A stretch of 64,000 bases of DNA from Vicugna vicugna (Eukaryota), in NCBI GenBank assembly GCA_013265495.1, contig MU058714.1, forward strand, positions 930,001-994,000, in the 5' to 3' direction. The notes below the pieces were generated by a model. It was not told the DNA's origin and made no database searches. It was given only the letters and a program-made list of their open reading frames with translations. The position numbers were made by a program, and so were the translations under genes. Position 1 is the stretch's first letter; each line of letters begins with the position of its first letter. This document shows, in pieces, positions 49,565 through 50,400 of this stretch.

Positions 49565-50400
49565 AAGGCAGAAGCGTCAGCAAAGCCGGCAGCCCTTCCT
49601 TCGCGGGCCTAGGCCCTTGCTTGCGGCGCGCACCCCAGCGCTCGGCCCACGGGAGCCGCCCCCGCGCGCGCAGCGTCTCTGGCCGCAAGGAAAGGGAGTC
49701 TCCGGCCGGGCTTGCTCCCCGGCCCTCCTCGAGGCGAGCGCGCGCAGACCCCTGAGCCGTCCGGGGCAGCCACGGGCCACGGGGACGCGCTCCCCGGCCG
49801 TGAGGGCGGAGCGCACGCGCGGCCTGAAGGGGCCTGACCGGGAGCCCTCCGGGAGGCGCCGCCTTAATGTGGGCAAGGCTTCTGGCGCATGCCGGGCTCC
49901 CTGCAGAAGACGTACAGGGCCTGCCCGGCTCACGATGGGGTTGAGCCCGACAAATCCATCCTAAGTTGGAGGAAGCCGAAAACGCGTTTGCCGGCGCGAG
50001 CCCGCGGAACATCGTCGCCCCGCCTGCCGGCGTCACACGCGCCGGACTCGTCCGCGAGCTGCGGTCGGCCCCGCGTGCGGCGCAGAGGCCGCCTCGGGGT
50101 GACGCGCTGGGCGTCGCACGTGGCGGGGGAGGGACCGGGGGCGCTGCGCGCCGCCACCGGGAAAAGGTCAAAATTCAAAGTGCGGCTTCTACCGACTGCG
50201 TATCGCTTCGCAGCATCGTAAAACTGAAGAAGCATGAGTTGAGCCACTGTAAGTCAGCAGCCCCGAACTTGTCATCGCCCCGAAAACGGAGAGTTGCTTC
50301 CCGGGAGGCGGCCTGCTTTCCCTGGAGAAAGGCGCCTGCCCCCCAGCTCCTGTCCCGGGCTCGGCGCTCTGCGGTGAACGCCCCGCCGCCCACAGGCTGG
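49565..50400. promoter_or_regulatory. Intronic CpG island
   Basis: Abrupt switch from AT-rich sequence (49021-49560) to very dense CpG, for example cccccgcgcgcgcagcg and gaggcgagcgcgcgcag. Confidence 0.75.
49915..50265 (+). mobile_element. MER47A-like (TcMar-Tigger) DNA transposon fossil
   Basis: TA at 49913-49914, then cagggcctgcccggctcacgatggggttgagcccgacaaatccatcctaagttg. Right end caaagtgcggcttctaccgactgcgtatcgcttcgcagcatcgtaaa...gagccactgtaagtc. Both match the remembered MER47A termini and the span is about the consensus length. Confidence 0.8.

What the first reader, a model, noticed from the sequence alone, without database searches (positions are those of the whole stretch)
49915..50265. 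AT-rich MER47A transposon fossil rewritten into a CpG island by one-way A/T-to-G/C substitution
Seen: both ends still match MER47A, including the left TA target, but the interior is almost pure G/C (gaaaacgcgtttgccggcgcgagcccgcggaacatcgtcgccccgcctgccggcgtcacacgcgccggactcgtccgcgagctgcggtcggcc). The remembered consensus there is AT-rich (GAAAATGCATTTAATACACCTAACCTACCGAACATCATAGCTTAGCCTAGCCTACCTTAAACGTGCTCAGAACACTTACATTAGCCTACAGTTGGGC) and aligns roughly collinearly, with most changes being weak-to-strong and many creating CpG. Known: old repeats normally lose CpG, and strong local weak-to-strong bias is the signature of GC-biased gene conversion at long-lived recombination hotspots, including PRDM9-independent ones at unmethylated islands. 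Inference: this island arose de novo from neutral transposon DNA in this lineage, through a loop of hypomethylation, recombination and gene conversion.
Basis: partly seen in the sequence, partly recalled or inferred. Interest (0 to 1): 0.72.

Follow-up and report, generated by a model that had tools for sequence, protein, structure and literature searches.

The report
Old transposon absorbed into CpG island

Summary
The observation largely holds. Window 49560-50400 is a real CpG island: 841 bp, 71% GC, CpG o/e 1.02. A TA-flanked CAG...CTG element at 49915-49249+1000 (that is, 49915-50249) sits inside it. That alignment shows 31-32 W>S against 0-4 S>W changes, and CpG rises from 2 to 21.

- The window lies inside RPTOR, so this is an intronic orphan island.
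- The island also holds about 500 bp of non-transposon DNA.
- A sister camelid lineage about 5% diverged has the same island and shares 30 of 32 W>S changes, so the rewriting is old.
- That lineage keeps 110 bp that the window lost. These bases match a transposon segment that was GC- and CpG-rich from the start, though that match rests on my memory.

A two-species rate test fits the proposed mechanism. CpG turnover is 3 times slower in the island than in its flanks, which indicates germline hypomethylation. Non-CpG divergence is 2.3 times faster, with a G/C excess in the window lineage.

No outgroup beyond camelids, no Dfam consensus and no methylation or recombination data were available. The scan has already noted the same process for a SINE and an L1 in this genome. 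It is a new example of a known kind.

The parts
49560..50400 (.). Orphan (intronic) CpG island: 841 bp, GC 0.707, CpG o/e 1.02. It has three GC peaks (49600-49900, 50000-50150, 50300-50400) separated by the two transposon ends.
49913..49914 (.). Left TA, one copy of the target-site duplication
   Evidence: read directly
49915..50249 (.). Fossil of a Tigger-type non-autonomous DNA transposon with CAG...CTG termini. It is 335 bp here and about 446 bp in the sister lineage. The subfamily name MER47A is unverified.
49915..49977 (.). Left end of the element, about 60% GC. Four derived changes cluster at 49918-49925 in the window lineage.
49978..50073 (.). Rewritten segment. 30 of the 32 W>S changes are shared with the sister lineage.
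50074..50128 (.). GC-rich interior with no tested counterpart in a consensus
   Evidence: no reference available
50128..50129 (.). Break point of a 110-bp deletion relative to the sister lineage. The missing stretch there is 84% GC with 19 CpG. It is confirmed in L001 and in contigs of runs X17 and X20.
50129..50164 (.). Remainder of the transposon's own GC-rich internal segment
   Evidence: memory-based consensus
50165..50249 (.). Right end of the element, 47% GC and little rewritten. The window lineage shows CpG-to-CpA losses here at 50177 and 50234.
50250..50251 (.). Right TA, the second copy of the target-site duplication
45280..45441 (+). Context: Raptor (RPTOR) coding exon, residues 116-169. 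The island lies 4.1 kb downstream of it in the same intron.
   Evidence: E 1e-31 to PDB 5h64_B
55265..55414 (+). Context: next Raptor coding exon, residues 170-219, 4.9 kb downstream of the island
   Evidence: E 1.6e-28

Best explanation
An old Tigger-type non-autonomous DNA transposon, still flanked by its TA duplication, lies inside an 841-bp orphan CpG island. The island sits in the 9.8-kb intron between the Raptor exons that code residues 116-169 and 170-219.

The originally AT-rich part of the transposon interior has been changed almost only from A/T to G/C. Another part of the interior was GC- and CpG-rich in the transposon itself, and 110 bp of that part were later deleted in the window's lineage.

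The likely mechanism has two components. First, the island is unmethylated in the germ line, so its CpGs do not decay. Second, it is a long-lived recombination site in a region that is GC-rich overall, so GC-biased gene conversion fixes W>S changes and creates new CpGs.

Nearly all of the rewriting predates the split of the two camelid lineages compared here. The island also includes about 500 bp of non-transposon DNA. The transposon was therefore absorbed into, or helped to seed, an island at least as old as that split; it was not turned into an island recently.

Shown: the island, the element ends, the asymmetry, the sharing with the sister lineage, and the rate contrasts. Inferred: hypomethylation, recombination and gene conversion as causes. 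From memory only: the family consensus.
For: - Island statistics.
- TA...TA and CAG...CTG termini.
It shows 31 W>S against 0 S>W, with CpG going from 2 to 21.
- 30 of 32 W>S changes are shared with L001.
- L001 is 94-95% identical over 47573-51222 and carries the same island, with GC 0.708 and o/e 1.0.
- CpG-to-TpG/CpA turnover is 11 of 114 in the island against 35 of 123 in the flanks, p=2.6e-4.
- Non-CpG divergence is 6.2% against 2.75%, p=9e-5.
- G/C excess in the window lineage: 31 against 14 in the island, 48 against 50 in the flanks.
- With the sister lineage as outgroup to organism C, three window-specific changes lie in the island: two W>S, one of which makes a CpG, and one CpG loss.
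- The region is GC-rich overall: 57% GC, CpG o/e 0.5-0.6 at every GC level, and Raptor exon GC3 of 0.91.
- The 110 bp kept in the sister lineage align to a remembered GC-rich transposon segment. Score 18 against a control maximum of 10; W>S 21 transitions to 3 transversions.
- gBGC as a source of orphan islands, and stronger gBGC at hypomethylated islands, are published (PMC11170920, PMC11161765).
Against: - Both consensus pieces come from memory.
- No outgroup beyond camelids was available, so the island's age relative to the insertion is open. The window-versus-L001 differences are unpolarised: the 31:14 excess could equally be S>W change in the other lineage.
- The two transposon ends stay at 47-60% GC between peaks of 78-84% GC. 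Uniform gene conversion across the island does not explain this.
- There are no methylation, recombination or polymorphism data.
- RNA-library contigs cover the whole intron, so they say nothing about any function of the island.
Confidence: 0.6

Rival explanations
1. The island did not exist before. It was born in the camelid stem lineage from a neutral, AT-rich transposon copy through a self-reinforcing loop of hypomethylation, recombination and gene conversion. Other mammals would still have an AT-rich, CpG-poor copy here.
For: - The W>S asymmetry.
- Slow CpG decay and fast non-CpG change in the island.
- Continuing W>S change in the window lineage.
- Nothing tested here excludes a birth before the split of the two camelid lineages.
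Against: - The island is shared by both lineages, along with 30 of 32 W>S changes.
- Since the split only 1-2 further W>S changes arose in the 93-nt segment. This fits a slow, long process better than a burst.
- 60% of the island is non-transposon DNA that is just as GC-rich.
- Part of the element was probably CpG-rich from the start.
- The whole region is GC- and CpG-rich.
Confidence: 0.2
2. Selection for a regulatory function maintains and extends the island. That function could be an alternative promoter, an enhancer or an insulator inside RPTOR. The transposon DNA was recruited and reshaped for binding sites.
For: - Orphan islands often act as enhancers or promoters (PMC8286816, PMC11170920).
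- The island is kept in both lineages with the same GC content and CpG o/e.
Against: - The island evolves faster than its flanks at non-CpG sites, 6.2% against 2.75%. That is the opposite of constraint.
- A 110-bp piece was lost in one lineage with no visible change to the island.
- No island-specific transcript was seen: RNA-library contigs span the whole intron.
Confidence: 0.1
3. Mutation bias, not fixation bias. Unmethylated, GC-rich, possibly transcribed or break-prone DNA mutates more often, and more often towards G/C, for example through error-prone repair. No gene conversion would be involved.
For: - The non-CpG rate is raised and transversions are unusually frequent: 19 transitions to 19 transversions in the island against 49:21 in the flanks.
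Against: By established knowledge, mammalian mutation is AT-biased, recombination sites included, so a 31:0 W>S outcome needs a fixation bias. This was not tested here.
Confidence: 0.07
4. The GC-rich interior is not transposon DNA. An unrelated GC-rich piece was inserted into, or replaced, the middle of the element.
For: - The stretch 50074-50128 could not be matched to any reference.
- The element's length differs between lineages (335 against 446 bp).
Against: - Two separate interior stretches align collinearly to remembered consensus pieces far better than all controls.
- In one search the W>S changes are 21 transitions to 3 transversions, as real descent predicts.
Confidence: 0.03

Closest known systems
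Orphan CpG islands gained through GC-biased gene conversion (Genome Biol 2024, PMC11170920)
   Same: It is an intragenic island away from any known promoter, with a W>S substitution excess. The paper names gBGC and transposon insertion as two routes to new orphan islands and reports overlap with phastBias tracts in several mammals.
   Different: No branch-polarised test such as phastBias could be run here, and enhancer activity is unknown. Here the two routes appear combined in one locus.
PRDM9-independent recombination hotspots at hypomethylated CpG islands in placental mammals (PNAS 2024, PMC11161765)
   Same: The proposed mechanism is the same: a stable hotspot at an unmethylated island, with stronger gBGC there, which the paper offers as an explanation for GC-rich islands in amniotes.
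   Different: No camelid is mentioned in that paper. No recombination or methylation data exist here, so hypomethylation is inferred only from slow CpG turnover.
'Biased gene conversion islands' of the primate CpG-island regimes, as summarised in PMC8286816
   Same: GC- and CpG-rich DNA built by W>S fixation in a GC-rich, probably recombination-rich region.
   Different: That class is described as highly methylated with rapid deamination. Here CpG decay is 3 times slower than in the flanks, which fits the canonical unmethylated class with gBGC added on top.
Earlier notes of this scan on the same genome (s1-246784 on a SINE, s1-223535 on an L1)
   Same: Repeat copies next to or inside CpG islands, rewritten from A/T to G/C, and judged to be ordinary gBGC.
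   Different: This case is a DNA transposon in an RPTOR intron. It adds a two-species rate test and shows that part of the element's GC-richness was probably inherited.
MER47 / Tigger-type MITEs (TcMar-Tigger non-autonomous elements of eutherians)
   Same: TA duplication, CAG...CTG termini, a size of a few hundred bp, and interior pieces that align to remembered family sequence.
   Different: The subfamily is not established.

Membership tests
CpG island (Gardiner-Garden/Frommer and Takai/Jones criteria) | Length at least 500 bp, GC at least 55%, CpG o/e at least 0.65 | tested here: met
   841 bp, GC 0.707, o/e 1.02. The same holds in the sister lineage: 968 bp, GC 0.708, o/e 1.0.
Canonical unmethylated CpG island | Low CpG deamination rate compared with surrounding DNA | tested here: met
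   CpG against TpG/CpA between the two lineages: 11 of 114 in the island, 35 of 123 in the flanks, p=2.6e-4.
Canonical unmethylated CpG island | Direct absence of 5mC in germ cells | not testable with these tools
   No bisulfite data were reachable.
gBGC tract | W>S substitutions in excess of S>W on a polarised branch | tested here: inconclusive
   31-32 against 0-4 when polarised by a remembered consensus. Unpolarised two-species excess of 31 against 14. Three changes polarised with organism C: two W>S and one S>W. No true outgroup.
gBGC tract | Raised substitution rate and clustering of changes | tested here: met
   Non-CpG divergence 6.2% against 2.75%. Four derived changes within 8 bp at 49918-49925.
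gBGC tract | Coincides with a recombination hotspot, and W>S alleles segregate at higher frequency | not testable with these tools
   No recombination map or population frequencies were available.
   TA at 49913-49914 and 50250-50251. The same is seen in L001.
   The CAG...CTG termini are present. The end-to-end inverted alignment scores 8, against a shuffle mean of 6.6, and 401 of 2,000 shuffles reach it.
   No repeat library was available and the window has no second copy. Two remembered pieces align significantly, which supports the family but not the subfamily name.
Promoter island | Transcripts that start in the island | tested here: inconclusive
   Only assembled contigs were available. 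RNA-library contigs run through the whole intron, 47980-53190, and cannot show starts.

The most novel reading that the evidence does not exclude
The transposon itself founded the island. Its own CpG-rich internal segment (about 100-130 bp with o/e near 1) escaped methylation after landing in this GC-rich RPTOR intron, became a stable PRDM9-independent recombination site, and the island then spread outwards by gene conversion over the element's AT-rich arm and the neighbouring unique DNA. If non-camelid mammals have the copy but no island, this would be a datable, step-by-step case of a CpG island born from a DNA transposon.
Probability: 0.15. Interest if true: 0.5.

Novelty: new member of a known kind. 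Interest (0 to 1): 0.28.

Why it matters
The locus is a clean worked example of how repeat DNA can be converted into CpG-island DNA. The transposon consensus gives the ancestral state, so the direction of change can be read directly.

The two camelid lineages allow a test that separates the two ingredients. Slow CpG decay points to hypomethylation. Fast, G/C-favouring change at non-CpG sites points to gene conversion.

It adds no new principle. gBGC-driven gain of orphan islands and stronger gBGC at unmethylated islands are published, and this scan has already noted the same process for a SINE and an L1 in this genome. Its value would rise if outgroups showed that the island is camelid-specific or that the transposon's own CpG-rich core seeded it.

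Tried and rejected
1. Second copy in the window. I looked for another copy of the element to use as a real reference. Permissive blastn found none.
2. Terminal inverted repeat. It was not significant.
3. 110-bp difference as a local duplication. No support.
4. Rfam scan of the window. It returned only a tRNA at 30220-30291 and nothing at the island.
5. Orthologues through spurious ORFs. The 207-aa ORF across the island (49551-50171, minus strand) found exactly one protein, which led to L001. No more distant species came up, so I ran no further search on this.
6. RNA evidence for a promoter. The RNA-library contigs belong to the sister lineage and cover the intron broadly. They may be pre-mRNA or DNA carry-over and cannot show starts. 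No conclusion.
7. CpG retention in the transposon ends as a clock for hypomethylation. Rejected, because even the flanks lose CpG slowly enough here (28.5% turnover between lineages) that retention is uninformative.
8. Left out on purpose. I did not scan the metagenome or genome contig collections for MER47-like copies or for the orthologous intron, and I did not fetch Logan contigs through the conserved Raptor exon peptides.
The other is a 100-nt piece from my own memory.
10. Assembly gap. The N run at 27028-27291 was left untouched.

Full report
**What is there**

Window 49560-50400 is a genuine CpG island. It is 841 bp long, with GC 0.707, 107 CpG and CpG o/e 1.02, and it is the strongest island in the window.

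An element lies inside it. It begins TA|CAG at 49913-49917 and ends CTG|TA at 50247-50251. Its left end is 60% GC, its interior (49989-50164) 81% GC and its right end 47% GC.

A 50-bp profile shows three GC peaks: 49600-49900, 50000-50150 and 50300-50400. They are separated by the two transposon ends. The island extends 355 bp upstream and about 150 bp downstream of the element, so about 60% of it is not transposon DNA.

**Genomic setting**

The window lies inside the Raptor (RPTOR) gene on the + strand.
- Window 45280-45441 encodes residues 116-169 (E 1e-31 to PDB 5h64_B).
- Window 55265-55414 encodes residues 170-219 (E 1.6e-28).
- A further exon lies near 6330-6425.

The island is thus an orphan island in a 9.8-kb intron.

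The whole 64 kb is unusual for a mammal. It is 57% GC, and CpG o/e is 0.5-0.6 in every GC class. The Raptor exon has GC3 of 0.91. By established knowledge, bulk mammalian DNA has CpG o/e of about 0.2-0.25. A regional bias towards G/C and CpG therefore underlies the local peak.

**Is the interior transposon DNA?**

No repeat library was available and the window holds no second copy. The family assignment therefore rests on memory and is a lead, not a test.

- The alignment to 49978-50073 scores 9. The maximum is 7 in 2,000 shuffles and in 852 natural stretches of at least 75% GC from the same window, both strands.
- 56 of 93 sites are identical.
- W>S is 31 of 54 W sites, S>W is 0 of 39 S sites, and CpG rises from 2 to 21.
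- A three-way MAFFT alignment gives 32 W>S and 4 S>W, so the asymmetry holds but the zero does not.
- W>S transitions to transversions are 19:12, which is not significant.

**A related genome**

The 207-aa spurious ORF across the island found one protein in the public collection. Its contig, L001 (3,786 bp, a Logan assembly), is 94-95% identical to window 47573-51222. L001 cannot be a human contig at that identity over intron DNA.

It has the same island (GC 0.708, o/e 1.0) and the same TA-flanked element. However, the element there is about 446 bp long: 110 extra bases (84% GC, 19 CpG) sit at window 50128/50129.

Contigs of three RNA-library runs from three studies carry the same sister-lineage states, and two of them carry the extra bases. 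DNA runs of three coded organisms hold the window version almost unchanged.

Earlier notes of this scan call this genome a camelid. I could not decode the organisms, so I refer to a window lineage and a sister lineage.

**The 110 bases**

Before fetching L001 I had recalled a longer Tigger-type internal segment that is itself GC-rich.
- It aligns collinearly to the L001 interior, including the extra bases. Score 18, against a maximum of 10 in 1,000 shuffles and 304 natural controls.
- 63 of 95 sites are identical.
- W>S is 24 (21 transitions, 3 transversions) and S>W is 3.

A false memory cannot produce this by chance. The extra bases are therefore ancestral transposon DNA that the window lineage deleted, and part of the element was GC- and CpG-rich when it inserted. 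This corrects the picture of a uniformly AT-rich element. About half of the interior is rewritten and the rest is inherited. It also leaves the subfamily name open.

**Timing**

Almost all of the rewriting therefore predates the split of the two lineages. The few later changes fit a slow, long process.

'De novo in this lineage' is thus not shown. It can only hold for the common stem of both lineages, and that needs outgroups I could not reach.

**Mechanism test with two species**

| Measure | Island | Flanks | p |
|---|---|---|---|
| Overall divergence | 7.0% | 4.0% | 5e-4 |
| CpG in one lineage against TpG/CpA in the other | 11 of 114 (9.6%) | 35 of 123 (28.5%) | 2.6e-4 |
| Non-CpG divergence | 6.2% | 2.75% | 9e-5 |
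| Non-CpG transitions to transversions | 19:19 | 49:21 | |
| Differing sites: window G/C, L001 A/T | 31 | 48 | |
| Differing sites: window A/T, L001 G/C | 14 | 50 | |

Slow CpG decay indicates that the island has been unmethylated in the germ line of both lineages.

The 31 against 14 split in the island gives a binomial p of 0.016. Most of those 31 sites are not CpG sites.

With the sister lineage as outgroup to organism C, three window-specific changes lie in the island. T>C at 49925 and T>C at 50264 are W>S, and the second makes a CpG. G>A at 50234 loses a CpG. Four derived changes cluster at 49918-49925.

Taken together, this is the pattern expected from gene conversion favouring G/C at an unmethylated, recombination-prone island. 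It differs from the methylated, fast-deaminating 'BGC islands' summarised in PMC8286816.

**What does not fit**

The two transposon ends remain at 47-60% GC between the GC peaks. The right end shows ordinary CpG losses and no sign of constraint, with 6 differences in 85 bp. A uniform process across the island does not explain this. A sharp edge of the active zone near 50165, with a separate small GC patch at 50300-50400, is one possibility.

**Function**

Nothing shows a transcript that starts at the island. The RNA-library contigs run through the intron from 47980 to 53190 and may be pre-mRNA or DNA carry-over.

**Comparison with what is known**

Gain of orphan islands by gBGC or by transposon insertion is discussed in PMC11170920. 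Stronger gBGC at hypomethylated islands, and PRDM9-independent hotspots in placentals, are shown in PMC11161765, which does not mention camelids.

This scan has already noted the same process on other DNA of this genome (s1-246784 for a SINE, s1-223535 for an L1), and both were judged ordinary.

**Verdict**

The gBGC-plus-hypomethylation mechanism is reasonably supported. The claim of a recent de novo birth from transposon DNA alone is not. This is a new example of a known kind.

I did not scan the large contig collections for family copies or orthologues, and I did not fetch contigs through the conserved Raptor exon peptides. The N run at 27028-27291 was not touched.

Noticed in passing
window 1-64000: The whole window is 57% GC, with CpG o/e of 0.5-0.6 in every GC class, AT-rich stretches included. 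About two dozen stretches meet island-like criteria. The Raptor exon at 45280-45441 has GC3 of 0.91. This looks like a strongly gBGC-shaped, possibly subtelomeric, region.
   Followed up: partly
window 30217-30291 (-): A tRNA-Ala (AGC) hit inside an RPTOR intron (Rfam 36.6 bits; ARAGORN agrees). It could be a tRNA gene or a tRNA-derived SINE head.
   Followed up: no
window 45689-46082: A 51-bp minisatellite of 7.8 copies with 89% matches. It starts about 250 bp downstream of the Raptor exon that ends at 45441.
   Followed up: no
window 41492-41860: A GAT/GGT-rich tandem array with nested periods of 9, 18 and 74-77 bp. It gives long Asp/Lys-rich and Met/Val/Thr-rich ORFs that are not coding.
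   Followed up: no
window 14050-14140: A 21-bp GC-rich unit repeated 4.2 times (97% matches) at the edge of a 1.26-kb island-like stretch at 14051-15310.
   Followed up: no
window 48600-48740 and 52600-52999: High-copy repeats. Summed contig depth is about 79,000 at 48600-48799 and about 250-950 at 52600-52999, against about 10 elsewhere in a DNA run. The loose ends are A-rich or TATG-type. These are probably a young SINE tail or microsatellite and another repeat.
   Followed up: no
window 50400-50540: An AT-rich block directly after the island is nearly identical in the sister lineage. The first 50 bases have 2 differences, where the flank average of 4% would also predict about 2. It may or may not be a conserved non-coding element.
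   Followed up: no
window 50338: The sister lineage has a 10-bp C-rich insertion here, and further small indels at 50191 and 50260. Indels are frequent inside the island.
   Followed up: partly
window 27028-27291: A run of 264 N (assembly gap or masked). It was left as it is.
   Followed up: no
runs X15-X20 on window 47200-53190: RNA libraries labelled as reproductive-system metagenome or transcriptome hold multi-kb contigs of this RPTOR intron in the sister-lineage version. These are host pre-mRNA or DNA in those samples, not microbial sequence.
   Followed up: partly
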